64,000 bases of DNA from Phallusia mammillata (lineage: Eukaryota): NCBI GenBank assembly GCA_965637545.1, contig OZ281495.1, positions 21,328,001-21,392,000 of the forward strand, read 5' to 3'. The position numbers and the translations under genes are program-made. The notes under the pieces are model-generated. The model did no database searches. It had not been told where the DNA came from and worked only from the letters and a program-made list of their open reading frames with translations. Positions 1-22,100 of this stretch are shown here, in pieces. How positions within the stretch are numbered: position 1 is the stretch's first letter; the number at the start of each line of letters is the position of its first letter.

Positions 1-99
1 ATTTATGCAGACATGAAATAAATTAACAAAGCGTTTGACTGTCCCGTCGAACCACAGTTTGGCAAGTCACGTGTCTGGTAAAAGCACGCCGAGCGTTAG

Positions 100-165
100 C
101 AAAAAGTTGTATTAGACAACAAATTATTTGGCCCCTCCCAAAATTTTTGGCTGCCTACGCCACTG
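100..165. mobile_element. Right end of a MITE-like repeat (ends ...GGCTGCCTACGCCACTG); left end not seen
   Basis: GGCCCCTCCCAAAATTTTTGGCTGCCTACGCCACTG resembles a CAGTGGCGTAG-type terminal inverted repeat (TIR). The partner TIR and TSD are not visible, so the start coordinate is approximate. Confidence 0.4.
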
Positions 166-338
166 TAACCTATATGTGTTTCCTAAACTTTGTTAAACAA
201 ATACAAATAACTTTGGGGAACTTGATGAGATAACGGTGTGAGCCACAAATCAATCCCCGCGTATTTTCTTATTTCCTGTCAAAAAGCAAGAAACAACAAA
301 TATAACTACCAGCTCGATCAGACCCGGTTATTTTGCAG

Positions 339-3044
339 TTACACGCCCCGCGGGTTAATATTTATTAACAAATGGGGTCCACTACGCCACGCAGCGGGTG
401 TGTCGTATATCTGCATGGGAGCAGCGAACCTGGGTATCGAGCCCGAAACTTACCGGGATTTTGCAAAAAGACAAATTCACTACATGCTGGGAGACAGCGG
501 ACTTGGAAGTTACGTGGTCGGGTATGGACCCAATCCACCAACGAGGCCTCATCACAGGTACGATATAAACTGATTATCCAACTTCGAGAAAGTTATACCA
601 ATTAATGCAACAGGATAATAGCAAGAGAGCTTGTATACTCATTGAATACGTTTTCATTACAAACGTTGATGTTGGCATCATCGAAAAGCGAATTTCTGTG
701 CAGAGTGATAATTATAACAGCTTCTATTGTGCAAAGATAAAAAAATCGTTTGGAAACGCAAGGGTTCAATAAACAACAATGAAAACACTGACATTAAAGT
801 CGCATGCTGAAAATTTTGACTGGTTCATTTAGCTGTACCACATTCGTGCTAAAGAACATTTCCACAAAAACGATTGACTGGGCATCAACCATTATGAATT
901 GTTCCAGGTATTTCTGAACTACATTCTGTATTTGTTCATTCAGAGCAAGTTCATGCCCAGACGATGTCGTTTGTGGATACGAACATTTTTCAAGTGAACT
1001 CAGGAATCCCCATGTGTTGTATGGAGCATTGGTCGGAGGGCCTGATATCAACGACCAGTACACTGATGATCGAAAGTCTTTTGAGTAATACATTATTAGC
1101 ACGTTTGTCTTATGTCTAAGATTTATCCTTATTTTAATGTTATCTCGGGGTCTGTGGTTTTCAACCTCTTTCATTGTCGACACCGCCTATATTTAAACAG
1201 TTAACAAAGCTCTTATTCTACTACACCAACGATGCGGCATCGATGGCAACCCTGTCTATATGCAGGGTATCTATAGGCTACTAATGCTCAGTGCCGGATT
1301 AACCATTAGGCAAAGTAAGCACGTGCCTACAGGCCAGTCAAAAATCCAGACCACTTTGCAACAACGATCTTTGTGACAATGATTTGGCAACACTGATAAT
1401 TCTATTTTTTTAGTTGGCAACCCTGATCTTCGGGCCACTTATAAAATGTGCCTACAGGCCAGCAGACCCTTAATCCAGCACTGCTATTGCTTACCAATTA
1501 CAAAAGTGTTAAGACTGATTAGGTATATTTATAAATGCCTAATGTTATTTTAGTTGTCTTGTGATGTTTCTATAATCAAAATGTATGGTTTTAGGCACAA
1601 TGAGGTGGCGTTAGATTACAACGCCTGCTTCCAGTCTGCCATCGCCGGTTTAAAGTATCTTGAGTTATATCCACCATTGACCACGACCCCTGAACCGAAC
1701 ACTGCCACCACCACAACTACAGTTCAAACCACCACTCCTGTACCCGGGGAAGCTCCAATCAATCCAGAAGATCTCGAAGAATTCTTTGAAAATAACAACA
1801 ATATTGACTGGGGAAATTACGGCCCGGGTGGCGAAGTTGTTGCAAATACAACTGTCATGGCTGTCAGCAACGGCACAGCGTTCATAAATCAAACTCTACC
1901 CAATAATGGAGAAACAAATATGACAGCTTTTGCGACAACAACTGTTGGAGTAACGGCATCTTCTGCTGCGTTTCAAACAACAACACAGCCATTGGATACG
2001 ACTTACATTACTTCAGCAACTACAGATTTAACCACTTTGAATCCGACCAGTGTTTCGCCTAGCACTTCTCAGCCAGTTAAAACCAGTAGCATTATAACCA
2101 GAACAACGACTTCGGTTACCCCTGTAATCGTCGTGTTGCAAAAGACGACCACAGAAGCACCGAAGGATTTGGTTTTCAAAGGTGAATGCACGTGTCATTA
2201 TTTGTTGTCGTGTGATAGATCATGTTTTACGTATTCGCATTTGAAGCAAATTTTGACAAATGCCATTTGTACAGGTGGAATTTGTGATCCAATGCAAGTT
2301 TTTGACTTCTGTGCCATCGAGCGAAGAAAATTCCTCACGCATCCCGCCCGACAAAAATACGAATGCCGGTACACTGCTTTCGAGGTGCGTTAAAGTCTTC
2401 GTGCGAGCTTGTAATTACATAACAGGCTTTGGTGTTTGAATAATTGATGTTTTAAATTGTATTTGCTACAGGAGTGCGCAGACAAACAGGGTGCCACCTG
2501 CGATGACTTGTGGAGTTTTTATAACTTTTGGAACAACGACGCTTCATACGATCGCTACTTTACTGAACTGGAGTTAAAATGCAAGGAAAAGGAGGAACGT
2601 AAGGAATTCAGAGCTCTAGCTAACTGGAAATTACTTTTTAAACTAGTAATCCGATTTTCTATTGTGTAGTGTACAAACAGAAGTGCTTTGTCCGAGGAAT
2701 TCAAAATACATTCAATGAATGCAACGATAAAGTGCAATCTATTCCCATTCATCCTAAGGAGTCCAATGTGATTTGTCGGTACGTGTTTTCCTGGTATCTT
2801 TCTAAATTTAACTTCCCAAAATTGTAAGTCGTAATTATTTTGCAGGTGGCACGCGTTTCAAAACTGCACGAATGAACAAGTCGGCCACTGTCTTGTTACC
2901 TGGAACACATGGAAATATTGGAATTTCAACAAAGGAAAGCCTCACTTTACACCCGAGGACCGAACATGTTCTAGCGCAGTTATTCGACCGACTTTGTGGC
3001 TGATAAATATTATTTTTGTTTTCTATTTTACTCAACTTGTTTGA
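339..3044 (+). CDS. Glycoside hydrolase family 9 endoglucanase (cellulase), 3' part; 5' exons lie before the window. Exons 339-557, 944-1084, 1595-2181, 2275-2384, 2472-2598, 2670-2778, 2846-3044
   Basis: Spliced translation gives GH9 signatures KWGPLRHAA, QIHYMLG...SYVVGYGPNPPTRPHHR, NPHVLYGALVGGPD and DDRKSFEHNEVALDYNA (catalytic Glu in NEVA). All introns are GT-AG with matching phases. Then a Thr-rich linker, a Cys-rich region and a hydrophobic tail ending at TGA 3042-3044. Confidence 0.93.
1289..1483. mobile_element. hAT-type MITE (195 bp) in a GH9 intron
   Basis: TIR CAGTGCCGGATTAA / TTAATCCAGCACTG; 8-bp TSD CTAATGCT / CTATTGCT (1 mismatch); internal direct repeat GTGCCTACAGGCCAG twice. 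Confidence 0.8.
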
Positions 3045-3519
3045 TTTGGATCCAATGCCTGAATTGTTGCAGTCACTGTGCAAAAGTGCCTTTATTATGT
3101 AAATGCATATATATCACATTGATACAGCCTTCGGTTTTAGAAGTTATGATGTAAGCTTTTCAGCCAAAACCCACTTGGAAAAAACATTGCTAATCATTTT
3201 CATGCGTCGCTAAGCGAGAACAGGAGCACTTTTACACTGCTTTGGCCGCTGGAGTTAGTCTTGTAGTATCGGAAATGCCGATCTGTCGCGTACTTTACGC
3301 TAAATTCATGTGGCAAAATATCACTTTCCATTATGGCCAGCAAAACTTGACTTAATGAGTGTGGTCAAATTCGCTTATCGTTACACCAATGCAATAAACT
3401 TTTATATGATTTTTATGAAGGAATTTAATTTTAGTCAGCAGTTCGGAAAAAATAGAAAACGGTTTAGTATCAGCAGCAAGATAAATAGTGACCCACCACC
3501 ACAAAAAAATCCAAAAAAT

Positions 3520-6064
3520 CTAGATGTGTTCATCACTTTTATCAAAAAAGTTGTTTTCCACAATAAAACGAACACATTGCAAAATATCGTTGCGTTCCCG
3601 GCGCATCTCTGGTTCCAAAAGCTATAAACAGATCACAAAATTAGACAAACCACTAAAATACTTAGTAGGACAAACCAATCCTGTATACTTGCCTTTCGTA
3701 AAAGCGAAGGTCTAGCTAAGCGTGATTTATATGCTGGTCTACTTTGCTGCTTGTTTCTTCCCTTTTTATATTGTCCAGGTTTTTCAGACAATGCAGGTTT
3801 AGCCCCATCTTTTGAGCTACTGTTTGGCAAAGGTATACAACGGTTAAGATCATTTAACCTTTAATCACAACTAGCTTAATTATTCTTACTTGAACTTACT
3901 TAATATTTTTAACTGCTGTTTCCGTGTCACTTAGTTTAGTGACTTCATTTGGCGTTTTTTCTGAGTCATCAGAATCTTCACTGTCATAATTTGACATCAA
4001 CATTCCTAAACCACCCAAGCCTTTCCCTATTGAAGGAATTGCCTCTTCTGCAGGAGTTTCACCATCTAATACATCTGTGGAAAAAGGCAGGAAAAGCTAT
4101 ATGATAAACTGAAGTGCCAAAGCCTTTACCTCAAGCTAACACCTTAAGTTTTAAGTTCATTTATGAAAGTTTGTGTTTGTTATGTCATAAAACCATCTGA
4201 AATAAAAAATGTCTTTGTTGAAATAAGATTATTAAAACAGTAAAGCAAAAAAGAATTAATGTAATAACTAAAACAAACAGTTAATTTCAACATAATACAG
4301 TTATATTTAATTTAAATATGAGTATGTACAGAATGTTCATGTCCTACCATTCTGTAAATCTTGATTAGCAGCAAAGAAATCCATTGGATTGTTTGTGGGC
4401 TTCTGTTGCTCATAAACCACATATTTATTGTTTTCAACATTCCTTGAATTTCCTCTTCCTCTACAGATTGAAAGCAAAAATGATTTTTTCACAAATAGAT
4501 TTGGATTATTTTTATTAAATTTTTTATTAAATTTTTTACCTAAATCTATTTCCCCTGGATCCTCTTCCACCTCTATTTGATCGTTTGCCTCGAAACTTGC
4601 TAGTTAAATAAATTGCAAAAAATTAGAACATCTTAAATTGAAAAAGGTGTAAAAAATGTTGCATAAAGCAATTCTGCTATTTAAAATTTTAGCCATTTTT
4701 TAAATCAATTCCTGAATAATATAATCCTATTTTAGTTGATAATGTATATTTTTTTACACAACAATTTTTTAGTACCTAAAAGATTGGGGCTGTAAAATTG
4801 CACCAGACTTGTGTCTTTCAATTTCTGTGGCTTGTTTCTCTTGAATACGAGCGCTGGTGGGAAATTTTTTTCTTCTTTCCTCTCTCCATTTTTTAATTTC
4901 TTCTGGGCTTTCCAAACTTGTCTTAGGTCCATCTGTATGAACAGACAATAAAACTTTTGTAATAGGTTCAAAAGCAAGGTTGTGTTGAGTAATTGTATTG
5001 GATTCTTTTGTTTGATTGAAAATATAACAAAAGGTATTCTATAGCATTGCAGCATTTTGTTTCTAATAAGCTAATAAATAAATTTATTTTGCTTGCAAAA
5101 AATATGACAAAAATAGTAAAAGTAAAAACACATTTTCGTGTTATGAGATGACTCTTTAAATGTCAAAGAAAATATTTTGAAAGAGTTTCCAATTTATTTT
5201 ACAAAACAACCTATTCTTAGGTGTGGATTTTTATCTGCACAAAATATATTTCCTCCAAATATCAAGGAGTTTCACCACCATGGTAATAAAACTATACTTA
5301 CAAGGGCCATGAAAATTGCGACGGTGAATTTCAACAATTTTAAAATGTGCTTCAAATTTACAACCAGTTTCTGAGCACTGCAAATAAAAATAACATGTAA
5401 AAACACACAAATACATTTTGTAAAAAAATAAATTTAACTTAAGTTACAATTCAGGGTTTACCAACAAAGTCTATGCAAAACACCTAATGGCACCAGTCTG
5501 CAGAACATGGCAGTTCCGCGTGCGCGCATGCACGACCGGTAGGTTCGCATGCGAGACAAATTTCAGCAGATGCAAAAGCAAGTTCAAGAGGTCAATACAG
5601 GCCAATTAAACGCCTTTGGTGCAAAATTTGCGCGTGCAAACCCAAAAAATTGGCGTGCAAAAAATTTTGTTTAAAAAAAATTGCGCGTGCCACATTCTGC
5701 ACTCTGCAGACTGGTAATGGCATATGTTTACACCAAGTATGCAACAAACCTTTATATGTTGTGAAAAGTGCTCTTGCTTTTTCTCTTGTGTTTTAAAACC
5801 TCTGTCACATACATCACAAAAGTCAATAAAGTTTTCAGATTTTTGTTTTTTACCACCCCAACCTGCTGAACAGTTCTCAAGCGTACGTTTCTTGTTAAAC
5901 TTTTGTTTTTGGTAATAGTGTCCATCTCTTGGCAATGCTGATGTATGTACGTTGGTGTAGCTTTTATCTTGACTGGTCTCATACTGCTGTCCACCAAGTG
6001 CAAATTGATTAAATGCGCTTGCGTTGTTAGCCAACTCTTGAAATGTAAAGCAGTTTGGATTCAT
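3520..6064 (-). CDS. NUFIP1: NUFIP1 (FMRP-interacting, box C/D snoRNP assembly factor, Rsa1 homologue). Exons 5750-6064, 5302-5377, 4776-4932, 4540-4599, 4348-4460, 3900-4074, 3693-3819, 3520-3621
   Basis: Two C2H2-like fingers (CDVCDRGFKTQEKKQEHFSQH; CSETGCKFEAHFKIVEIHRRNFH), the NUFIP1 motif LESPEEIKKWREERRKKFPT, an RG-rich segment and the C-terminal RPSLLRKLLEPEMRRERNDILQCVRFIVENNFF. Intron phases are consistent; the last intron is GC-AG. Confidence 0.92.
5493..5714. mobile_element. 222-bp MITE with CCAGTCTGCAGA TIRs and 8-bp TSD, in NUFIP1 intron 1
   Basis: CCAGTCTGCAGA ... TCTGCAGACTGG flanked by exact TAATGGCA (5485-5492, 5715-5722); internal GCGTGC repeats. Confidence 0.85.
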
Positions 6065-7258: not shown

Positions 7259-7579
7259 TTTTAGACCATTTCCAACATTCTAATCGTGAACTTTAAAAAA
7301 AATACGAACTAGTGTCAACTTGTAAGTATAGTAAAAGCAGTTTTGTTGCAAGGACCCTGACATTAAAAGAGATTAAAGCATCAAACAAATGTTCATTGAT
7401 TTTGTTAGTTAATCTGCGTTGAACTGCATGCGGTGTCGTACGTTCGCACCATCTTAACAAGTAACAAAAAGCACAATAAAATGTTAACTGCACCGCAGTC
7501 AGAATAAGTTAGTTTTATTTACTTGTTTGGTAGATTGTTGTGCGTAGTTTAGCTAAATTTTACAACAGTTAATGATTTT

Positions 7580-7665
7580 TAAGCTGCAGACAGTGCACAC
7601 TGTTTCGACCTATAAGGTCTCATGAGACCTTATAGGTCGAAACAGTGTGCACTGTCTGCAGCTTA
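7580..7665. repeat. 86-bp perfect palindrome (no loop) built from a hammerhead-ribozyme-like motif, probably derived from a Penelope-like element
   Basis: Two 43-nt arms with the centre between 7622 and 7623. Each half reads ctcATGA-GACC-ttata-GGTC-GAAAC-AGT-gtgc-ACT-GTC: near-complete core, stem II, stem III and a GUC cleavage triplet. Confidence 0.85.
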
Positions 7666-8854
7666 TCATTTATTGGCTCATATGCTTTTACATTAATGAT
7701 TTTTTTTCCTGAATCGTTCCCGGTTTCCCTGTACACCATAAAAAGAAAGCAAATTGGACCTGATTTGTTTCCGGTTCTGGTAATAGTACCATATTCTGCT
7801 AACACAAACATGTTTTTGTCAATGTGTTTTTGTTTGAAATGTGCAGCATAGCGAATAGGCCGTTACACCATAAGGGTTTCGCAATGTCAAGAACCGTGCC
7901 GTTTTTACTACATCGGAAAAGCAGTAAAATCACGTCAACGCCTGTCACCGTTCATTTCCATTATTTGCTCCAGTAATTTCATCGGGTGGTACTATGTCAA
8001 CAAACGGGCAGCAATTTTTGATGTTTTACCACGTGCAAACAATTAAGCTCGATGAGAAATCAAATTGCTGTTTTGATGAAGCAAAATGTCGTAAAACGCA
8101 ATCTTGTTCGTTTCTTGAACTTTTAACTCGCTTCCTAACATCCTATTTTTGAACATCAATGGGTTATCGTCAACGACTTACATTAAAAGGGGTTAAACGA
8201 AAACGCACCTTGCTCCGCAAACTATAACAAAGGCAATAAAATTTCGTTTAAGAGTTAAGAGTTTCAGAGTAAAATACGGGTTTGCAGTCGCTAGACTCAG
8301 ATACTAAAGAGTTGAAACTGGGTCAAAGGCGTTGCTGGATACGATGTGACTTGTTAAATAATGCATTATTGGAGTCTGTCGGAGTTGATTGGTTCTCTCT
8401 TTCTTTGTGACGTGTGCCATGGGGAAATCGCTCGGATTTAGCTGGTACGGCAGCAGCCACGCGTCTAATCGCGCTGCTGGATGTTGCTTTACAAATGGGG
8501 ACAATCGTTGGTTTACTTACAGCGATAATTTGTACCGCATTCCCAGTTAGTGTTGATCGAAGAGTGCAGTGTGGAGAATGTAGTTCCAGTATTCAAGTGC
8601 TTTTTCAAGAAGCAGGCAGGTAAAAAGCAAACACAAGGTATATCAGATGACTCAAATCAGTTGCTAGTTGGCAAACATTAAACGATCAAGCAAACCGGAA
8701 CCGGCGGTTTTTGAGCTCAAGGTTTAGAATTACGCGAGAGTTGTTTGCTGCTTTCAGGCCAGGTGGGGAGAAACTCGCATCGCGAAGAACCGCTGCGGGG
8801 CTGGAAACGTAGTATTTTCCCCAACGAGCACGCGCACATACTTAGGCGGCGTGG

Positions 8855-8875: not shown

Positions 8876-10186
8876 TGGCGTGAGGTATGTGACGACACCG
8901 TCTTGTGATTCTCCGCGTTTTTTGAATGGCCACTTTTCGCAGCTATTACTGGAAATGATGTAGCGCGCAATTTGGTTTATTGACAAAGTCAAACATGTCA
9001 GCACTGCAGGTCAACTGTACATAGTCTATTTGTCCCAAGGCCCATTGGGCCATCAAAACACATTGCACCACACGCCCAATCTTCGTGTGTTGTCCTGCCT
9101 GAATGTCCCCCGCTGGATATCTACGATTAAAACGAAGAGATTTTCGTCATATGACCCTTACAACGGCGTTTTTCGTCGCTGCGGATATCGGCCGCATCGA
9201 CCTTCCCGTGGCTTGTAGTGCTACGATCAATCGGGCCTGGCCCTATGTCTCTGCATTGATCTAAAGCCGCTAGTTTGTCTCCTATCTGCTGCAATCTATG
9301 TGTTGCAAGGATATTTGTAGTTTCTTTTTTAATAAATCAAGTTAGCAAGAAATATATTGCATGATAAGTTTACCACAAGCAAAACCGTACGTTTTTATGA
9401 GAGTTGTCACAAGCACATGAATAGTAACATAGATTACAGGATTGTACGTTTGAAGACGAACTTTACTACAAGCTGCAAATCAGCATATATCAAACGTGAA
9501 CCGGTATATGCCAGATGTGATAGTGCCGGCGTCTGTTCTGCCACAACGTGGGGCGCCAATCCTATCCCAAAGAATTCTTGCATTTAAGCCGGATAAGTAC
9601 ATTGACGGATGTTCTTTGTCAGTCAGTTAGTTTGTTTGCTGGTAGTTTAAGTTGGTTCATATGACCGGTTGAGTAATCAGCGTTCTAACCTAATTTTAGC
9701 GAACGAGTAAATAAATGTACCTCGCAAGCGCTTTGATGCAAGGATATACAATGTATTTTATAGCGAGCTTTAGGAAGCAAATCTGCACTTGTACAGTAAA
9801 TTTATCGATCTTGCGGTAATTGCCATTTTCATTTTAGCGCACCAGCAGAAGAAGTCACACTTTCCTCTCGGGAGCCGATTGCAGCGCATTGTATAACGTT
9901 GCATACGAAAGGCTTGTAGAATGGCATTGTTGCCTGTGGTGCCTTTGCTTTGACGAATTCATGCCCATGCGAAGCAATTCAGAGATAACTTCCTGGCCAT
10001 TAATCAACGAAGCAGTTTATGCCAAGCGGTTTACAGCAACCAGCGGGTCACAGAGATTTTCTACCATGTCAGAGTACAGCACTACTTTTCTAAGTGTTAG
10101 AAAAAAACTATTGTTGCTTTTTCAGCTTATGTTAGGTTTAAAATCGGTTAAAACAACGACCTCTATTGAATTGTGGTTTAAAAGGA

Positions 10187-13100
10187 ATGAAACTGATTGA
10201 CGTGACATCCGCCTGTGCTGAAAAGCGACCAGCGCCGGATGATTTGCTTTCCATTGCAAGTTTGCCCACAGCGAAGCAGATAAAACTGGAATCAACTCCT
10301 ATTGTGCCTGCCGGGTAAGTGCGTATCTATTTAATTTCGACGCTTGTGAAAAAAAAAACAATTTGCGTAACGTTTGTTACTTTTTTACGCCGATTAAACT
10401 GCTAATAAGGATATTTATTTCTAAAAAAAGTATGAAAGTAGATATTGATGAATGAGTTGTTTTAACAGTATTTGCTCATGCATGTAAAACTTAAAAAAAA
10501 CTGACACAACACAGCTAATTTGGTGCCCTGGTGTAGTGCTAAAAATCGATAAACAGGGCAGGCGACAGAGTCATTTCGAAATGTTACTGTACCATGGAAG
10601 TTGTGTTGATTGATGATAAAGCCATATCCACCAGATCCGTTAATGGGAAGTGCTCTGCTAAAATTGCCTTTACATCTCCAACACACGCGAAGTATTCAAT
10701 CTACGTCGCATGTTTTCGTTGAATGTATTCCATTCTTTTCCATGTAGGCCTACTGTTTCGCGTAAATAACATCTAGCAGGCACTTGCGACATTTCGCCAC
10801 TAATATATCCATGTTGTATAACTGACCATCCTTTTAGACATCGACTATTCGTTTGACCATCTGATTTCTTTTAGCACTTCAATTTGTTCGAGCTCCAGCC
10901 TTTTATCGATTGAAAACGACCATTGCTACCTCGCTTCGTCTTTACCGAGTCAAGAGAAAAGTTCAAGTACGAACGACTTATGCGCAATTTTTCCAGCTGG
11001 TGCCCAAGAAGAACTTGAATCTGACTTTGAACCTTTGTTTGACGATTGGGACAGTTTACCATATGACAGTGACGACGATGACGGCGAACTGTTTCGATCA
11101 CTTATGGCGTCGCCAGTCGGAACCACAGATAACACATCAGTTCACGGATCGGAGGGCTATGGAACTGACACTTCCGACACTGCCGATACGTTAAACGTGG
11201 CTTCATCAAAAGACTCAGAAGTAACATCCAAACCTGCTCAAGTTGTGGCATCACCAAAACTGATAAAAGACAGTAATAAGCCATTTACACCTGTTTTTCA
11301 AGCGCATTCGCTTATACGTACACAGGCCACAAAAACTGTTGCATCAAAGTGTAGCCCTGTATTATTTTTAAACAAAAATTTAGAAAAAGGAAAGAACGCT
11401 GTTACAAGAGTGTATCACATTCCCAAACCCGACCCCACTCAAGGTAATAAAGTGGAAACACAAACACGAAAAACCGTCTTACTCCGAGTTGTACGACCTG
11501 CCAAAAGGTAAGATGAGTTTTCTACTTGTTACAAATTAAAGTCACAATATTAAAAAAATATTAATAGGGATATTTGCGATCAACACAGTTCGAGCCTGTT
11601 TTCTGAATTCTAAAATTGTTTTGCGTTACCAAAACTTTGCGTGCGCACGTAGCATGCTTGAGGTTAAATAATACCGGTAACCGGTGTGTTTACGTGGGCT
11701 GAATATTTTAAAAAAGTTTTGGCGGTCATGGTTATTTTGTTGAAAGAAAGTATTTCCCAAATTTTTCCCAAAAAATCTTACACGCTACGATCAGAAATGG
11801 AGAAGGCCGAGTGTGAAGGTAAAGAGAATACAAGAGCACGGCTACCAATCGGCGCGGGAAACCACCGCACGTTTATAAGCAATCGCGCCCTTTGCCGAGC
11901 TTCACTCCATTTGCCTCGTGACGTCTGGCTGGGCGTAGGGCTGGCTGCTACGTGTACGTTTTTGCTGCTTTTGGTTTTAGTTACTGTTCAAGTTATAGCC
12001 AGTACATTAGGCTGTTGTTTACTCACCAGAACTGCAAACAAAAAGCCATTTTTGGACAGTACTCAGATATTGCTGTTGACAAGTACTATTTTCAAAAGTC
12101 CAGATTAGAGTATTGATTGACTCAAGACAGCACAAAACTCATTTCATACTTTACCAAAACTCTGGCAGAAATTAACCGAATTATATTTGATTCAGAACTT
12201 TAGCTCAGGAGTTTGGGTTGTTGTGCCTTTATTACACATACCAAACATGGCGACGTAGTAAGACTCCATTTTGTCGAGGGTCTGGTTGTTTTGTCGATTT
12301 CGTCACGCCTGGTTGCACACGGATTGCTGGTACAGGTTGCGTTAAGTTAAGCGAGCCGACTGGTAGTTATCTGAAACAGCCTGCAGCGTTTTTTCTGCTG
12401 ATTTTCCGAAAACCGGAAGACCACTTTGAACAGGTTAATGCAATTTTTTGCCTTACATGATAGAGCTGTTGCATTAAAACACGCCATTGTTTCAAAAAAT
12501 CACGCTGTAGTTTGTCACGTCACGTTTTTAGCTGTCAACCAATCACATAATCGTTTAATTTCTCCGGATCGATGTTACTTATCCAAACCCGTTAGACTTT
12601 TTAATACCTCTTTTTCATGTTTGTATTATACTGAAGGAAAATTATATATTTTTAGTGCTTCTTTACTACAACAAAATCGAAACAACAACAATATCACGAT
12701 GAGTCGAGCAAATTTAAAGATGGAAATGGAGAGGGCAAGGGTAGGTTTGATGTATAGTAATAACAACAGTGGTTTGTTAAACTGATGTTTCCATTTGTAT
12801 TGGTGTTGTTACTGATGTGCACCTGCTAAACGAACAGTCAATAATAAAGCCACTACTTTAACTTTAATTAATCCAATACAAATTCACAACAAAGCCTTAT
12901 TATGGTCTAATTTCATATTTTTTGTTGTTAACTGATGTTTCTATGCAAAACTGATTATTTCAAACATAATATTGTCATGATATCATAAATTGTATGGATT
13001 GTTTTTCTGTGATTTTACACTTAGCATCACACACAATTTCTGGCAGTGCATCTAAAATATACAGGATCGCTTGATGCACTCAACATCAGTTGGTGCACCC

Positions 13101-16100
13101 TTATATCCCTTGATGCACCTTTATATCGTGCAGTGCACCCCTATATTACTTGGTGCACCTTTATATCATACAGTGCACCCCAATATTAGTTGGTGCGTCT
13201 TTATACCATGCAGTGCACCCTTATATCCCTTGATGCACCTTTATATCATGCAGTGCACCCCTATATTACTTGGTGCACCTTTATATCATACAGTGCACCC
13301 CGATATTAGTTGGTGCATCTTTATATCGCAATATTGGATCGCTTTGTGTACCTTTATGAATGTTAAGGTGCACCAAGCGATCCAAGTTTTTATGTATATT
13401 TTAGGACTTTAGATGCACCCAACTTTCAGCTACATTATCTACTTTGTAACAAATATTTGTTGTAGCATTTGAGTAATAGCAAGTCAACTATGTCATGTGT
13501 ACAAAATATTATGATAGAGATGCAAAATTGTTTTTGATCCTCTGGAAATCGTTGCTTAAAGTTGCTTTTTTGACGGTTGCTGCAAATGGATTAGAAGATA
13601 TGTTTTTTTTACTTCTTCAATATCAATCAACATTTTTCAGGCCCTGCAGGAGGAAAAACAGTCGCAAGAAATCCGTGTAAACAAGCAGCTTTCTGCCCCT
13701 AAAAGTTCAGCTACCTCTTCCATTAACTTTCCATCTATATCAGTATCTACTCCACAGCTGCCTTCAGCCATATTAAAGGTTTGTAGCAAAAAGTATTAAA
13801 ATCAAATGATAGCAAGGCACAGTTGTGTTGTAGCATATTGCTAATAACATGCATATGGTATGAATATGGGTTAGCTTAACAAGTTTTTGTAGTTTTGCTT
13901 TAGAACCACAGAAAAGCTCAATGCAAAAGCCCAATGGTAAGATATGTAACCTATTTATGAAAGTCATTGTTGATTATTATGCAGAAATATTACTATGTAG
14001 TTTATGTATTCATATAACTTAACATAGTTATATATCACACACAAAGTCATGTTGTATTTTTATGTTTTTGTCAATTCATTATGTATTTTGGAGGGGAACT
14101 TGCCATTTTTTGTAACATATGACTCCAAAGACATGATTTTTCAAATTTGTTTTGACACACAAATTTGTTTGACACAGAACAATAGTAAATGTAGGCTTAT
14201 AACATTCTTCGTTCTTGCAGTATATATTTGGTTTACATGGATTGACCTTTTTTTGAAGGGGCATATTGGCTAAGTAACTTTGTGTAAAAAGGTAGTAAAA
14301 GTAATACCCAAGCAAAAATAAACAGATGTAAAACTTTATAGCCGTTCCCAAACAATACTGAATTGTCATCCATTTTACTATTACTAAATCAATCTACTTT
14401 TGTTTTATAGTATGTGTTGTGCAGTTGGCACTTCACTGTTTTTTTTTAACTATTTTATTCTAGGTGTAGATTGTTTGAGTTTGGATAGGCAGAAAGCACA
14501 ACATAGCATCGTTTCTTAACCTTACATGTGTAAAGGATGCTTCAGTATCCAAGCAGAACATGCATAAAGATAGCCGCTTGATTTGCCTAGGTTGCTAAGC
14601 AACTTTAACATAAATGAAGCTTTGAGACACATATTGACGAACGATGTTTAGATTCGAACATTGTCTAAAGTGGAAGTCAATATCGAGTTTCCCGTATTAG
14701 CCACGCATTTCCCTTATCCGATTGCTATGTGAGATTAAGTAGTTCGTGGGTGAAAACCATTAGCCATAGCGGGCGTCACTTTCTATCCACACCGGATTAA
14801 AAACTCCTACGGCTTTTAACTTCCTAGTCATTCCCGCATCGTCTGATTAACTTGATATTAAATTTGCGTTCTAAAGTTAAATCGCATCCGAAAGCATTTT
14901 TTCCTGCGCTACATCATCAACACGTTCAGTTGAATTTAGACTTGCAGTTCGTAACATTGAGCCAGTGTAAGGTATATGGTAGAGGATGACGAACGGTGGT
15001 GTACAGTTGGAAAGCATGTCAGACCATAGTAGCTCAGCATGTCCGCCGCTAGTGGGCGATGTATACAGCAAGAACTCATCAGCTAATAGTTTTAATCCTA
15101 TGAGGTACATTCCACCGAAATGTCGCCTCAACAAAGATGATACAGGTTGTCATGCACAGAATACAGGTCGCATGCCGTGGCAAGACGGCCAGGCTATAAC
15201 GCATGCTGATAGTTTACAGTCAGTGCCAGCACAACGGCCCCATGCCCTTGAATGCTCCCCACATTCATGGCAAGGCAGTAACGGCCAAAGCGGTAACGTT
15301 GCCGAGGCCAATATGCGGTACAAGAAAAGTGTTGTATACGGAGCTTATTATCAATGCCAGGTTCGAACTTGTATTCTTTTTTATTTTAGTTTATGGGTGA
15401 AATCAAGTGACTTTTAATAGTTCACAGTAATTGTACACCACCATACAAGTGGAATAAACAACACCTGTAATATATTGTACAAACCGAACTGTCTATAAAA
15501 CAAAGTAATTTAGATTACATTTTGGCACCATTACAATCCCATTTTTCGGTTTTGCAACTTAAATTCAAACAAAACGGGGACTTCGCAGAATTTGCATATT
15601 TCTTGTGGCCGTTCCAAAATCTCTCAACACGCCGCAAAATTTCCATAAACTTGGTTGCCAATAATGACGTAATCTTATTTTGTGCCAGGTCGAAACTCGT
15701 CTCGAGAATCCCACGCAGTATTACGTGAAAGAAACGCAGCGTAACCAAGTGCGTGACTACCTCAGCCAATCACACGATGGTACGAAGTATGTTGTCCGCC
15801 AGCTGCTTAACCCTGCATCAAGTGCTCCTGCAGGCGGTAAGTTTGTTAGAACTGTAAAAGTTCATAAAAGGCAGCCAACTGTTTATTCCAACGTAGAAAA
15901 GTAAAGTAAGATTGTTTTGCCAATCCCGATTCCAGAACCATTCACCGACAATCAATCGAACTTAATGTTTGAATTGTCTTTACATAAGTAAAACATATGA
16001 CATTACTTTTTTCTTACCTTAACCGTGATAAAAAGTGTTTTGTCCAGCATGCTTTTCGTTAATAAATTTACACAAAGGTTTCTTTATCTATTGCGAAACT

Positions 16101-19100: not shown

Positions 19101-22100
19101 TTCTGAAAATACGAAAGCCGCAAAATATTTTGTCGTCAGTGTATTTTCGCTAATTTCCCCACAAAGCGTTCTAATGGGCACGGTTACACAAGTATGCGAA
19201 GGGGTGAAATAGTTACATCATGCGAATGGTGAATTTCGTAGGGAAATTCCAGCAACGAACTTGGCAACGTTCCAAATAAAGTTATCTTGCGCCACGTTTC
19301 AATAACCTTGATGAAATACGTGCACAATCAGGGCGTCACCTCATACGCGGCCCCGCCCCTCGTGGGCTGACAATATTTCCAGTTTTATCGCCACGTCTAA
19401 CCATCGATCTTCAGAGCTGCCCTGTCGCTGGCTTTCGCAAGTTCCTGTCATTGAAACTTTGTTTACCAGTTTGTAAAGCCATAAGCAACGATGACAACAC
19501 AGTTTTTTCATTGCAATGGATTTTATTCTTGCATCCGTTTTCCCGTATCGGAAGCATCTATGTCGCAATATTCGTTTGTCCTCTGTTCTTGTTTTAGATT
19601 TTAATTTGTCTCGTGCTATTCACTCTAGCGCAACACCTGCTTTGGCAAAGTCCGCGTGAATAGAACAAATTTAGGCATCGATTGTTAAGTTAGTTGCCTT
19701 GTGTAACAGTCCACTGCTATCTGAACCTGCCATGACGTGGATGTATGAATACGCACATTGGCAGCCTTGGTGGCAATATGAAAACCCTTATTACCACACG
19801 TCCCAGGTAAATAAAAAAATAAAAAAAAACATAGCGCCACTCAATCGATAACATGCCGTGTGTGGATGCATTGTATACTTATGTTTCTATTGTTTGTAGG
19901 TAAACGAGATTGTGGACGACATTGTGAGCATTGAGTCGAGTATGGGAGATGAGCACTTCCGATATGATCGCACTGCGAATACGGTACACTGATTGGCAAA
20001 ATTTTTAATCATATATCGATCTGTTGATAAATAACAAAAAGCACCCAATTGTGAATGTTTTTGCACCTCTCCAACATACAAAGCAAGCAATAACATGTAA
20101 CCTTCGCAAATGCAATTCCCACAACATATTTGTATCATGATTTGTACATTTTTGTTTGCAGCTTCCAACAATTTCACCCAACCAACTTGACACGTTTGCG
20201 TTGGGAGCCTCACAAAATCTCGGGGTAGTTCGGAAAGAACAAACTTCATCGTCGTATCCTCTCGTCAAACGGGAACTAACGGACGACGAGATTCGACATT
20301 TTACGAAAGACAGAATCAAAAAAGACAACCACAATATCAGTGAGATACAACTCCTCACAATATTACTTTATTTTCGTAATAAACTCTCTCGGTTAGGCAT
20401 TCTTGGAAAAGACTTTGCTTCTCGAACAAACTTACACGATTTACTTTTTTTTTAAGTTGAAACATTGTTCAATCTAAGTTTAAACCGAGTTTCGGTAAGA
20501 ATTCCAATGCGAGCAACACGGTAGTCGTCATGCACCATAGACATGAGCAGTTATGAATCACCAACTATTCGTGCTCCTGTGTAGTTGAGGGTTGCGATAT
20601 TCCAAACATCTAGTTTGCTCTTCACCTATTGCGGCTTTTAGCACGAAATTTTATAGCATAATTTTTACTTTCAGTTGAGAGAAGGCGACGTTACAACATC
20701 AACGACCGAATTAAGGAGCTGGGACACATGGTTCCGAAGTCACTCGACCCGTAAGTTGTTGTATTCAACTTTTTGGGTGGCTTAGGAATGTAGGAACGCC
20801 TTTTCACCCCTTAAAAAAGTTTGTGGGGGTACGACCACTCACATCAGTGGTAAAGTCATCATCATCATGTCACCATTTAAGTGCTTAAAGTTTTGTTTTT
20901 TGAACGTTACGTGAAGGGATGTACATTTTTTTGTAGTTACTAAAGGGTTACTTTTTTGTAAGTCAATTTTTTTGCATTGGTAGTAAATTTATTGTGTTAT
21001 CTATGCAATGTCCTTAACTTAATCAAAAATGCTTGCTATTCCGGGCCTATTGGGAAAAGGGTCTAATTTTTTATTGGCCGTCGCATTGAGGTAGATTGTT
21101 CTCTAATGGTCTAATTCCTATTGCTTGAACACAGGGACGTTCGCTGGAATAAGGGATCGATTTTAAAGGCAGCAGTCGATTATATTCATTCGCTTAAGAA
21201 CGAGCAAGCACGCTCCCGGCAAGTTGAACAGAGGGCAAAGCAAATGGAAAACATGAATAAGAAGTTACTGCTACGAGTTCAGGTACTATTTAATGGACCT
21301 AAAAAAACAATGGACACTACATCGCTTTTTTTGGGGGGAAAAATTAACTGGAACATTTATGAGGTTGTGTCCAAATTTCTGACCGTTGCTTTGTGTTTAG
21401 GAACTAGAAATGATGGTCCAACAAAGCGGGATCCCCGTCTCTAGTGATCAGACGGACAAACAAAACATGGTACAAACCCTGCTTACCGACTCAACGTCCC
21501 CCACACGCGATTTAAACTTCACAAAAGGTTTGATACAGCATCATATATTAAACCAGGGGCCGGTAACCTTTTTAACACTGCGGATCGGTTTGAAACTGAA
21601 ATTATTATCACGGACCGGCCTTTAAAAGCCACAAATGTTTCGCACTGAAACTAATTACAGTTACTACAACTTTGATTTAATGTGAACTTTGAGCAAGTTT
21701 TATGCGGCCCGGTAACAAACTCCTCACGGACGCCCGGTGGTTGGCGACCACTGTATTAAACCGTATCAAATTTTGGGATTCCACCGTACTTTAAAAAGCT
21801 GTTTTTTGTTTTTTATGTTTTGCATTAAACTGAAGTTTTGGACTTGTATTAATGCTGTATTTTGTCAGCATGGGTACTAACATGATATTCGTATTTTAGA
21901 GCAAGAATTGCAAGTTTCAAGTTTTCCCTCGAATCCCGTGACACCATCGTCACATTCCCCTATACTGGTCACAAGTCCACCCGGCACATCCAATGACCAA
22001 GTTCTGGTGTTTCAGCCAGGCCAGCATCATCACACGCCTGTCGGTAGCAGCGACCAGCAACAAATGGGACACAACCAGGTACTATCATACCTAAGAAAAG

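What the first reader, a model, noticed from the sequence alone, without database searches (positions are those of the whole stretch)
2275..2969. Unrecognised about 80-aa six-cysteine aromatic-rich domain, present as two tandem copies
Seen only after splicing four exons. Repeat 1 has spacing C-x8-C-x17-C-x7-C-x7-C-x26-C and repeat 2 has C-x11-C-x17-C-x7-C-x7-C-x25-C. Shared positions are HP in the x17 loop, C-R-[YW]-x-A-F-x-x-C, W four residues after Cys5, [FY]-W-N and [YH]-F-T near the end. Both repeats start at a phase-1 intron, so repeat 1 is a symmetric 1-1 module as expected for exon duplication. I do not recognise the domain. Inference: regularly spaced W/Y/F on a disulfide-stabilised module appended to a cellulase suggests a new cellulose-binding module, or an adaptor.
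Basis: partly seen in the sequence, partly recalled or inferred. Interest (0 to 1): 0.8.

Follow-up and report, generated by a model that had tools for sequence, protein, structure and literature searches.

The report
New helical cysteine-rich module on tethered cellulase
The end of a cellulase gene in a tunicate-like genome encodes two copies of a small, expressed and conserved six-cysteine helical domain that matches no known family, sitting between a mucin-like stalk and a probable lipid (GPI) anchor; what it binds is still unknown.

Summary
RNA contigs from three studies use exactly the four proposed exons (2275-2384, 2472-2598, 2670-2778, 2846-3044), all GT..AG, with intron phases 1/0/1/2. 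The cysteine spacings are as reported.

The two repeats are homologous (hhalign probability 96.5%, E 1e-9). A profile search of 1.84 billion proteins found only seven relatives, in other genome assemblies and in marine metagenome or metatranscriptome contigs. One orthologous locus again has GH9 exons upstream. Six of the seven last repeats that could be read end 21-30 residues later in an uncharged hydrophobic tail of GPI-signal type.

No Pfam family, PDB sequence or PDB fold matches. AlphaFold2 on natural intron-less homologues gives a four-helix mini-bundle (pLDDT 78, pTM 0.68).

So "unrecognised domain" is supported. "Cellulose-binding module" is untested and not favoured: the fold is all-helical, and the conserved Trp/Phe lie on the hydrophobic side of helix 3.

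My best reading is a new non-catalytic module of a GPI-tethered cell-surface GH9 cellulase, with its ligand unresolved. A faint language-model resemblance to neuritin (NRN1) and DUF1397 remains an untested lead.

The parts
338..557 (+). GH9 catalytic-domain exon (Pfam positions about 315-387 of 444); the gene starts upstream of the window
   Evidence: Pfam PF00759, E 5.6e-19; RNA contig piece 338-554 with a GT..AG joint, cut +3
944..1084 (+). GH9 catalytic-domain exon (Pfam positions 388-427)
   Evidence: Pfam PF00759, E 2.6e-09; joints 554/941 (cut +3) and 1084/1595
1595..2181 (+). Exon carrying the last GH9 residues, then an approximately 170-aa Thr/Ser/Asn-rich mucin-like linker with several N-x-[ST] sequons
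   Evidence: Translation; no Pfam family; RNA contig piece 1595-2179 (cut +2)
2275..2384 (+). Repeat 1, first half (Cys1-Cys3 and C-R-Y-T-A-F-E); preceded by a phase-1 intron
   Evidence: 50% identical exon in the orthologous locus L017:10957-11064
2472..2598 (+). Repeat 1, second half (Cys4-Cys6, Trp-rich helix 3); ends in phase 1
   Evidence: relatives P0008 and L010:7781-7918
2670..2778 (+). Repeat 2, first half (Cys1-Cys3-Arg); ends in phase 2
   Evidence: partial match in L012:2437-2493
2846..2969 (+). Repeat 2, second half (Cys4-Cys6, W-x2-W-x2-W-N helix 3)
   Evidence: relatives P0001, P0004, P0005, P0007 and L012:5932-6060
2970..3044 (+). C-terminal tail: small residues S-S-A directly after Cys6, a short polar spacer, a 16-residue uncharged hydrophobic end, then stop TGA at 3042-3044. 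This has the form of a GPI-attachment signal.
   Evidence: Translation; six of the seven tails read (window, P0001, P0002, P0004, P0006, P0007) share this geometry: 21-30 residues after the last Cys, mean Kyte-Doolittle 1.7-2.7 over the last 15, 0-1 charges; L012's frame was cut short

Best explanation
Window 2275-2969 encodes two tandem copies of a previously unclassified extracellular module of about 75-85 residues. The module is predicted to be a mini-bundle of four helices, presumably stapled by three disulfides between its six invariant cysteines. The pair forms the C-terminal end of a GH9 cellulase: catalytic domain(s), a mucin-like Thr-rich stalk of about 170 aa, module 1, module 2, then a GPI-type attachment signal that begins one residue after the last cysteine.

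Shown:
- the exons are spliced and expressed as proposed;
- the two copies are homologous;
- the module is conserved in several other, probably tunicate, genomes and marine eukaryotic contigs;
- in one other genome it is again linked to GH9;
- it matches no known sequence family or solved fold.

Inferred: the protein is a cellulase tethered to the cell surface. The module is its non-catalytic, membrane-proximal part, folded around an aromatic core supplied mostly by helix 3. It probably serves as a holding or recognition module at the interface between plasma membrane and tunic, for a protein partner or a glycan, rather than as a classical flat-faced crystalline-cellulose binder. The ligand is not resolved.
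For: - Splicing and expression: identical GT..AG joints in contigs of three studies, none in the DNA run.
- GH9 identity of the upstream exons.
- Homology of the two repeats: shuffle test and hhalign probability 96.5%, E 1e-9.
- Family: 7 true hits among 1.84 billion representatives. They include P0002 and L009, which have a Thr-rich region, two uninterrupted repeats and a hydrophobic tail. L017 has GH9 exons 79-85% identical to the window's, followed by the module.
- Single locus in its own genome, although that genome has at least 10 GH9 loci.
- No Pfam family, no PDB sequence match, no fold match.
- All-helical models: pLDDT 77.6 and pTM 0.68 for one repeat, pLDDT 70 for two.
- GPI-type tails in six of the seven last repeats read.
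- The conserved aromatics lie on the hydrophobic arc of helix 3, with polar residues on the opposite side.
- All alleles seen in the RNA contigs keep the cysteines. One allele changes Tyr to Trp at +7, the residue that repeat 2 has at that position.
Against: - Function is pure inference; no binding or localisation data exist.
- GPI anchoring was judged by eye and by simple hydropathy, not with a dedicated predictor. The N-terminal signal peptide lies outside the window and was not located.
- The models rest on a shallow alignment (10-11 rows, many of them half-domains). I could not inspect coordinates, so the disulfide pairing and the burial of the tryptophans are not verified.
- Helix 3 is hydrophobic over about 220 degrees, more than a small bundle can bury. 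Some conserved aromatics may therefore be exposed, which favours a ligand-binding role, possibly for a carbohydrate.
- In L017 an extra copy lies between the catalytic domain and the stalk, so the module is not only a membrane pedestal.
Confidence: 0.5

Rival explanations
1. The module is a new carbohydrate-binding module, the first all-helical one. It holds the tethered GH9 enzyme on nascent or tunic cellulose through exposed Trp/Tyr/Phe of helix 3.
For: - The architecture catalytic domain, Thr-rich linker, small non-catalytic module is the standard layout of modular cellulases (established knowledge).
- Aromatic content is very high: 14 of 78 and 11 of 76 residues.
- Helix 3 is hydrophobic or aromatic at 5 of 7 consecutive positions across the family, too many to be fully buried in a small bundle.
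- Trp +4, Trp +10 and Asn +11 are invariant or nearly so.
- In L017 a further copy sits next to the catalytic domain.
- The host is a cellulose-making animal: GH6 is present in its genome, and tunicates are the only animals with GH6/CesA (PMC10334666).
Against: - No match to any CBM family in Pfam.
- The predicted fold is all-alpha, whereas known cellulose-binding modules are beta-rich or knottin-like (own knowledge).
- The aromatic periodicity fits an amphipathic core helix.
- The last copy is pinned within 1-3 residues of the presumed GPI attachment site.
- Only one of at least 10 GH9 genes in this genome carries the module.
Confidence: 0.25
2. The module is not new. It is a very divergent member of an existing family of small secreted or GPI-anchored six-cysteine helical proteins (neuritin/NRN1, PF15056, or insect DUF1397, PF07165), captured by the cellulase gene through exon shuffling.
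For: - In two language-model feature searches, the only named clusters among the nearest were DUF1397 (0.84, 0.80) and NRN1 (0.76, 0.78).
- From memory, unverified here: neuritin is a GPI-anchored protein of about 140 aa, with six cysteines at roughly similar spacing and its attachment site just after the last cysteine.
Against: - Those scores are below the tool's own noise level: shuffled proteins reach 0.8 a third of the time.
- hmmscan of P0002, P0006 and the other relatives against Pfam at E up to 10 lists neither family.
- The NRN1 model does not touch this locus in the own-genome search.
- The Atlas fold search with the two-repeat model gave TM 0.34 or less.
- I could not run a profile-profile or model-to-model comparison with these families.
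Confidence: 0.15
3. The module is an inert, rigid spacer or folding unit. It only supports efficient GPI processing or keeps the stalk off the membrane, and has no ligand.
For: - In five of the seven last copies read, the small residues of the presumed GPI site follow directly on the last Cys.
- The module evolves much faster than the catalytic domain: Ea is 50% identical to its L017 orthologue, against 79-85% for the GH9 exons.
Against: - Arg after Cys3, Gly-His before Cys5 (in repeat-2-type copies), Thr-Trp and Trp-Asn are strictly conserved across distant members. That is more than a spacer needs.
- The tandem duplication is retained across species.
- An extra copy lies away from the membrane in L017.
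Confidence: 0.08

Closest known systems
Modular cellulases with a linker and a carbohydrate-binding module (for example GH9 with CBM2, CBM3 or CBM49)
   Same: A GH9 catalytic domain followed by a Thr/Ser-rich glycosylated linker and a small non-catalytic, aromatic-rich module, here duplicated.
   Different: There is no sequence match to any CBM family in Pfam. The predicted fold is all-helical and disulfide-stapled rather than beta-rich. The module is followed by a GPI-type signal. Binding is untested.
Membrane-anchored GH9 endoglucanase KORRIGAN of plants (class A GH9)
   Same: A GH9 cellulase held at the plasma membrane of a cellulose-synthesising cell. PMC10986139 discusses this analogy for tunicate cellulases and says epidermal cellulase candidates are being sought.
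   Different: KORRIGAN is anchored by an N-terminal transmembrane helix and has no accessory module. Here the tether is C-terminal and GPI-like, and it is preceded by a mucin stalk and two Cys-rich modules. Expression in the epidermis is not shown.
Neuritin / NRN1 (PF15056)
   Same: A small six-cysteine, probably helical extracellular domain followed directly by a GPI signal (own knowledge). It is among the nearest named clusters in the feature search.
   Different: There is no HMM match. The feature scores of 0.76-0.78 are within noise. Neuritin is a stand-alone single domain, not a tandem module on an enzyme.
RAMP extracellular domains (three-helix bundles with two or three disulfides)
   Same: The best-ranking class of PDB entries for the single-repeat model, about 80-100 residues, helical and disulfide-linked: 6uun_E, 9bq3_E, 3aqe_D, 9mni_E, 6umg_r.
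Insect DUF1397 / 27 kDa haemolymph proteins (PF07165)
   Same: The nearest named clusters by language-model features (0.84, 0.80); secreted animal proteins.
   Different: There is no HMM match at E up to 10. The scores are below the reliability threshold. The family's function is also unknown, so it would add little.

Membership tests
Glycoside hydrolase family 9 (the host protein) | Pfam PF00759 match above the 27.7-bit cut-off | tested here: met
   69.2 and 37.3 bits on exons 331-555 and 942-1085. Further GH9 exons lie upstream on the same strand.
Known carbohydrate-binding module families (as represented in Pfam) | Significant sequence match to a CBM profile | tested here: not met
   No Pfam family at E up to 10 on the four exon peptides or on the homologues P0002, P0006, P0007, P0001, P0004. 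dbCAN/CAZy profiles were not available.
Known carbohydrate-binding module families | Experimental binding to a polysaccharide | not testable with these tools
   Needs recombinant protein and pull-down or ITC.
Known carbohydrate-binding module families | Exposed planar strip or cleft of aromatic residues | tested here: inconclusive
   The conserved aromatics at +4, +6, +7, +9 and +10 of helix 3 cover a 220-degree arc.
Neuritin NRN1 (PF15056) | HMM match above the 27-bit cut-off | tested here: not met
   Not listed for any homologue at E up to 10. The own-genome search with PF15056 hits only an unrelated place (23.6 bits, with stops) and not this locus.
Neuritin NRN1 (PF15056) | Shared fold, or a profile-profile match | not tested
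   No NRN1 sequences or models could be obtained through the tools. Only weak feature scores of 0.76-0.78 are available.
DUF1397 (PF07165) | HMM match above the cut-off | tested here: not met
   Not listed at E up to 10. Feature scores are 0.80-0.84 only.
GPI-anchored proteins | C-terminal signal: small residues at the attachment site, a short polar spacer, then an uncharged hydrophobic end of about 15-20 residues with no cytosolic tail | tested here: met
   By inspection and hydropathy, the window and five homologues fit. No dedicated predictor was available.
GPI-anchored proteins | N-terminal signal peptide | not tested
   The 5' end of the gene lies upstream of the window. GH9 exons were mapped there, but the first exon was not identified.
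RAMP-like extracellular helical bundle | Significant structural superposition | tested here: not met

The most novel reading that the evidence does not exclude
The module is the founding member of a new, animal (tunicate)-specific carbohydrate-binding family with an all-alpha, disulfide-stapled fold. It holds a GPI-tethered GH9 cellulase on nascent cellulose microfibrils at the epidermal cell surface. That would be a tunicate counterpart of the plant KORRIGAN/COBRA functions combined in one protein.
Probability: 0.2. Interest if true: 0.8.

Novelty: new variant of a known kind. Interest (0 to 1): 0.55.

Why it matters
Tunicates are the only animals that make cellulose, and how they trim, order or remodel it at the cell surface is poorly understood. 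PMC10986139 states that epidermal cellulase candidates are still being sought. A 2026 Oikopleura preprint (10.64898/2026.03.31.715263) notes an expansion of GH9 genes linked to cellulose-producing epithelia.

A GH9 enzyme that carries a mucin stalk, a lineage-specific Cys-rich tandem module and a GPI-type tail is a concrete candidate for a surface-tethered cellulose-processing enzyme. The module itself is a compact and apparently new fold family. It could be expressed and tested directly for cellulose or partner binding. If it binds cellulose it would be a structurally new kind of CBM. If it does not, it is one more lineage-specific extracellular domain of modest general interest.

Tried and rejected
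- **Pfam on exon peptides and homologues**: only chance-level rows. The DUF3653 row (0.14) is rejected.
- **PDB sequence search with the family profile**: only a RES-domain row at E 1.4, rejected.
- **Word-based protein searches**: these returned only the query itself, plus P0009, P0001 and P0008. The length filter also excludes full-length fusions, so they say nothing about long proteins.
- **Degenerate DNA pattern on metagenome contigs**: found only two more contigs of the L012 species. Their upstream flanks are too short to reach any GH9 exons.
- **P0003** from the big search is a low-complexity repeat without the cysteine pattern; rejected as spurious.
- **Three weak own-genome tblastn hits**, L002-L004 (E 0.009-0.05, each with a stop), were not recovered by the family profile; rejected.
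- **Thrombospondin type-1 repeat** was considered because of W-x2-W-x2-W and six Cys. Rejected: the motif lies after Cys5, the domain is predicted helical, and there is no Pfam hit.
- **GFRalpha/GAS1, saposin, kringle, PAN/apple, CBM14, CHH and OBP**: their Cys patterns, recalled from memory, do not fit, and none was hit.
- Exons were searched by reference, and natural uninterrupted homologues (P0002, L009, P0007) stood in for the joined model.
- **No complex prediction was run,** because no specific protein-protein binding is claimed.
Full report
**1. What is in the sequence**

Window 1-3044 (+ strand) holds the 3' part of a GH9 cellulase gene. Exons 338-557 and 944-1084 match Pfam Glyco_hydro_9 (69 and 37 bits).

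Exon 1595-2181 finishes the catalytic domain. It then encodes about 170 residues rich in Thr, Ser and Asn, with several N-glycosylation sequons, which I read as a mucin-like stalk.

Four short exons follow: 2275-2384, 2472-2598, 2670-2778 and 2846-3044. The spacings are C-x8-C-x17-C-x7-C-x7-C-x26-C and C-x11-C-x17-C-x7-C-x7-C-x25-C.

After the last cysteine come S-S-A, a five-residue spacer and a 16-residue uncharged hydrophobic end, then TGA at 3042-3044.

**2. Are the exons real?**

Laying Logan contigs of four runs on window 1-4000 showed seven joints in transcript-like contigs of three different studies (X1, X5, X17). The joints are 554/941, 1084/1595, 2179/2273, 2382/2470, 2598/2670 and 2777/2845, plus upstream continuity. 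All are GT..AG once the stated cut offsets are applied. None appears in the genomic run X15.

The gene model is therefore confirmed, and so are the intron phases (1, 0, 1, 2).

The 93-nt intron 2182-2274 is in frame and open, but it is spliced out in all three studies.

The alleles seen in these contigs leave every cysteine intact. One allele (2521 A>G with 2522 T>G) turns Tyr into Trp at helix-3 position +7, the residue that repeat 2 has at that position.

**3. Is it a repeat, and a conserved domain?**

Within the window, the second halves are significantly similar: score 44 against 23 +/- 5 for shuffles, reached by 14 of 5000. The first halves are not.

A profile of the two second halves was searched against 1.84 billion representative proteins. 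It returned eight hits at E up to 0.001, seven of them genuine.

- P0002 is a 5'-truncated metatranscriptome contig. It has a long acidic/Thr-rich region, two uninterrupted repeats and a hydrophobic tail.
- P0006/L009 is a metagenome scaffold with a Thr-rich region, two repeats in one ORF and a tail.
- P0007/L018 is a Tara metagenome scaffold.
- P0001, P0004, P0005 and P0008 are exon-sized ORFs from other genome assemblies.

Profiles of repeat-1-type and repeat-2-type second halves from different species align with hhalign probability 96.5%, E 1e-9.

The family signature is:

- the six Cys;
- C-R-[FYW]-x2-F-x2-C;
- usually G-H before Cys5;
- Trp at +4 and +10, an aromatic at +7 and Asn at +11 after Cys5;
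- F-[ST] about nine residues before Cys6.

The loop between Cys2 and Cys3 varies from 10 to 21 residues.

Intron positions inside repeat 1 and repeat 2 differ from each other, but each is conserved across species. The planktonic members are intron-less there. The duplication is therefore old, and the introns are not simple copies of one another.

**4. Context in other genomes**

In L017, GH9 exons 79-85% identical to the window's lie upstream on the same strand, so this is the orthologous gene.

L017 has an additional copy of the module. Its first half is fused to the end of the linker exon, and its second half lies at 10037-10189. This copy comes before a Thr-rich stalk, which is followed by an exon 50% identical to the window's 2275-2384.

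In the window's own 240-Mb genome there are at least ten GH9 loci. The module, searched as exon peptides and as a family profile, occurs only here.

The genome also has a GH6 match. That fits a tunicate, since tunicates are the only animals with GH6/CesA (PMC10334666). The organism's name was not available to me.

**5. What is it? Comparison with known families**

- No Pfam family matches the exon peptides or the uninterrupted homologues at E up to 10.
- The family profile finds nothing in PDB sequences.
- AlphaFold2 on P0002:296-380 with the 11-row alignment gives pLDDT 77.6 and pTM 0.68, with four helices at 6-24, 40-52, 58-68 and 77-83 and a disordered Cys2-Cys3 loop.
- The two-repeat model (pLDDT 70, pTM 0.51) shows the same helices twice.
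- Foldseek against PDB finds nothing below E 1.8. The best-ranking class is the RAMP extracellular three-helix bundles, at TM 0.29-0.37.
- The Atlas fold search with the two-repeat model gives TM 0.34 or less.
- Two language-model feature searches put DUF1397 (0.80-0.84) and neuritin NRN1 (0.76-0.78) among the nearest named clusters. These scores are inside the noise range the tool quotes.

From memory, neuritin is a GPI-anchored six-cysteine protein with roughly comparable spacing. I therefore keep it as a lead. The NRN1 HMM does not match, and I had no legitimate way to obtain its sequences for a profile-profile test.

**6. The tail**

In the window and five homologues (six of the seven tails read; L012's frame was cut short) the last cysteine is followed by 21-30 residues. 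These begin mostly with small residues (SSA, GSN, SSA, NGA) and end in 15 uncharged hydrophobic residues with no cytosolic extension. This is the form of a GPI-attachment signal. It was judged by inspection, not by a dedicated predictor.

**7. How it most likely works**

Shown: the architecture and its conservation.

Inferred: the protein is a cellulase tethered to the cell surface. The catalytic domain(s) sit on a glycosylated stalk above two compact helical modules that lie directly on the lipid anchor.

Helix 3 carries the conserved aromatics at +4, +6, +7, +9 and +10. These fill a 220-degree hydrophobic arc, while +1, +2, +5, +8 and +11 are polar. The simplest reading is that most of these residues form the core of the mini-bundle.

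The arc is nevertheless wider than a small bundle can bury. Several polar residues are invariant (Arg after Cys3, Gly-His before Cys5, Asn +11). L017 has a copy far from the membrane. A ligand-binding role is therefore likely.

I put 0.5 on 'new non-catalytic holding or recognition module of a GPI-tethered GH9, not a classical CBM, ligand unresolved'. I put 0.25 on a genuinely new helical cellulose-binding module, 0.15 on a divergent member of a known family (NRN1/DUF1397), and 0.08 on an inert spacer.

**8. Novelty and limits**

No relatives turned up beyond a handful of probably tunicate sequences, in a search that read every one of 1.84 billion representatives. No Pfam, PDB or fold match exists. 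This supports a new, lineage-restricted domain family attached to a known enzyme type, so I rate it a new variant of a known kind.

Limits:

- the big search used a half-domain profile;
- the word searches cannot see full-length fusions;
- the models rest on a shallow alignment, and I could not read their coordinates;
- the N-terminus and signal peptide lie outside the window.

An earlier first-stage note of this scan (s1-366353) describes the same stretch as a tethered GH9 with a mucin stalk, a Cys-rich tandem domain and a GPI-type tail.

Noticed in passing
Upstream of the window: G000:C2:21321559-21325084 and 21325470-21329085 (L007): Two complete GH9 catalytic domains lie in tandem on the same strand, less than 400 nt apart. 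RNA contigs X5 and X1 extend 2930 and 2089 nt upstream of window 338, which is enough to include the first domain. The gene may therefore encode a double-GH9 polypeptide. L017 shows the same tandem arrangement. The junction was not verified.
   Followed up: partly
Whole genome G000: The GH9 family is expanded to at least ten loci on C1, C2, C4, C5, C6 and others. Only this locus carries the Cys-rich module.
   Followed up: partly
window 2182-2274: This 93-nt intron is in frame, has no stop and would add 31 residues with five cysteines. It is nevertheless removed in the RNA contigs of all three studies.
   Followed up: yes
window about 1207-1480: A very high-copy repeat lies inside the 1085-1594 intron. 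Depth in the DNA run is 1e5 or more, against about 84 nearby, with many loose ends at 1285-1289 and 1483-1485. It is probably a short interspersed element.
   Followed up: no
window about 3100-4000, minus strand: A convergent neighbouring gene: joints 3621/3693 (CT..GC) and 3819/3900 (CT..AC) are minus-strand introns. The RNA contigs run from the cellulase's 3' UTR straight into it, so the two 3' ends overlap or abut.
   Followed up: no
L017:9148-11064: The orthologous gene of a related species has a third copy of the module between the catalytic domain and a Thr-rich stalk. The copy number and position of the module therefore vary between species.
   Followed up: partly
window 2521-2522: An allele in run X5 changes Tyr to Trp at helix-3 position +7 of repeat 1. 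This recreates the W-x2-W-x2-W pattern of repeat 2.
   Followed up: yes
window 7571-7670, 14986-15360 and 19732-19806: Other first-stage notes on this window report a palindrome of hammerhead-ribozyme motifs and alternative MITF first exons. I did not examine them.
   Followed up: no
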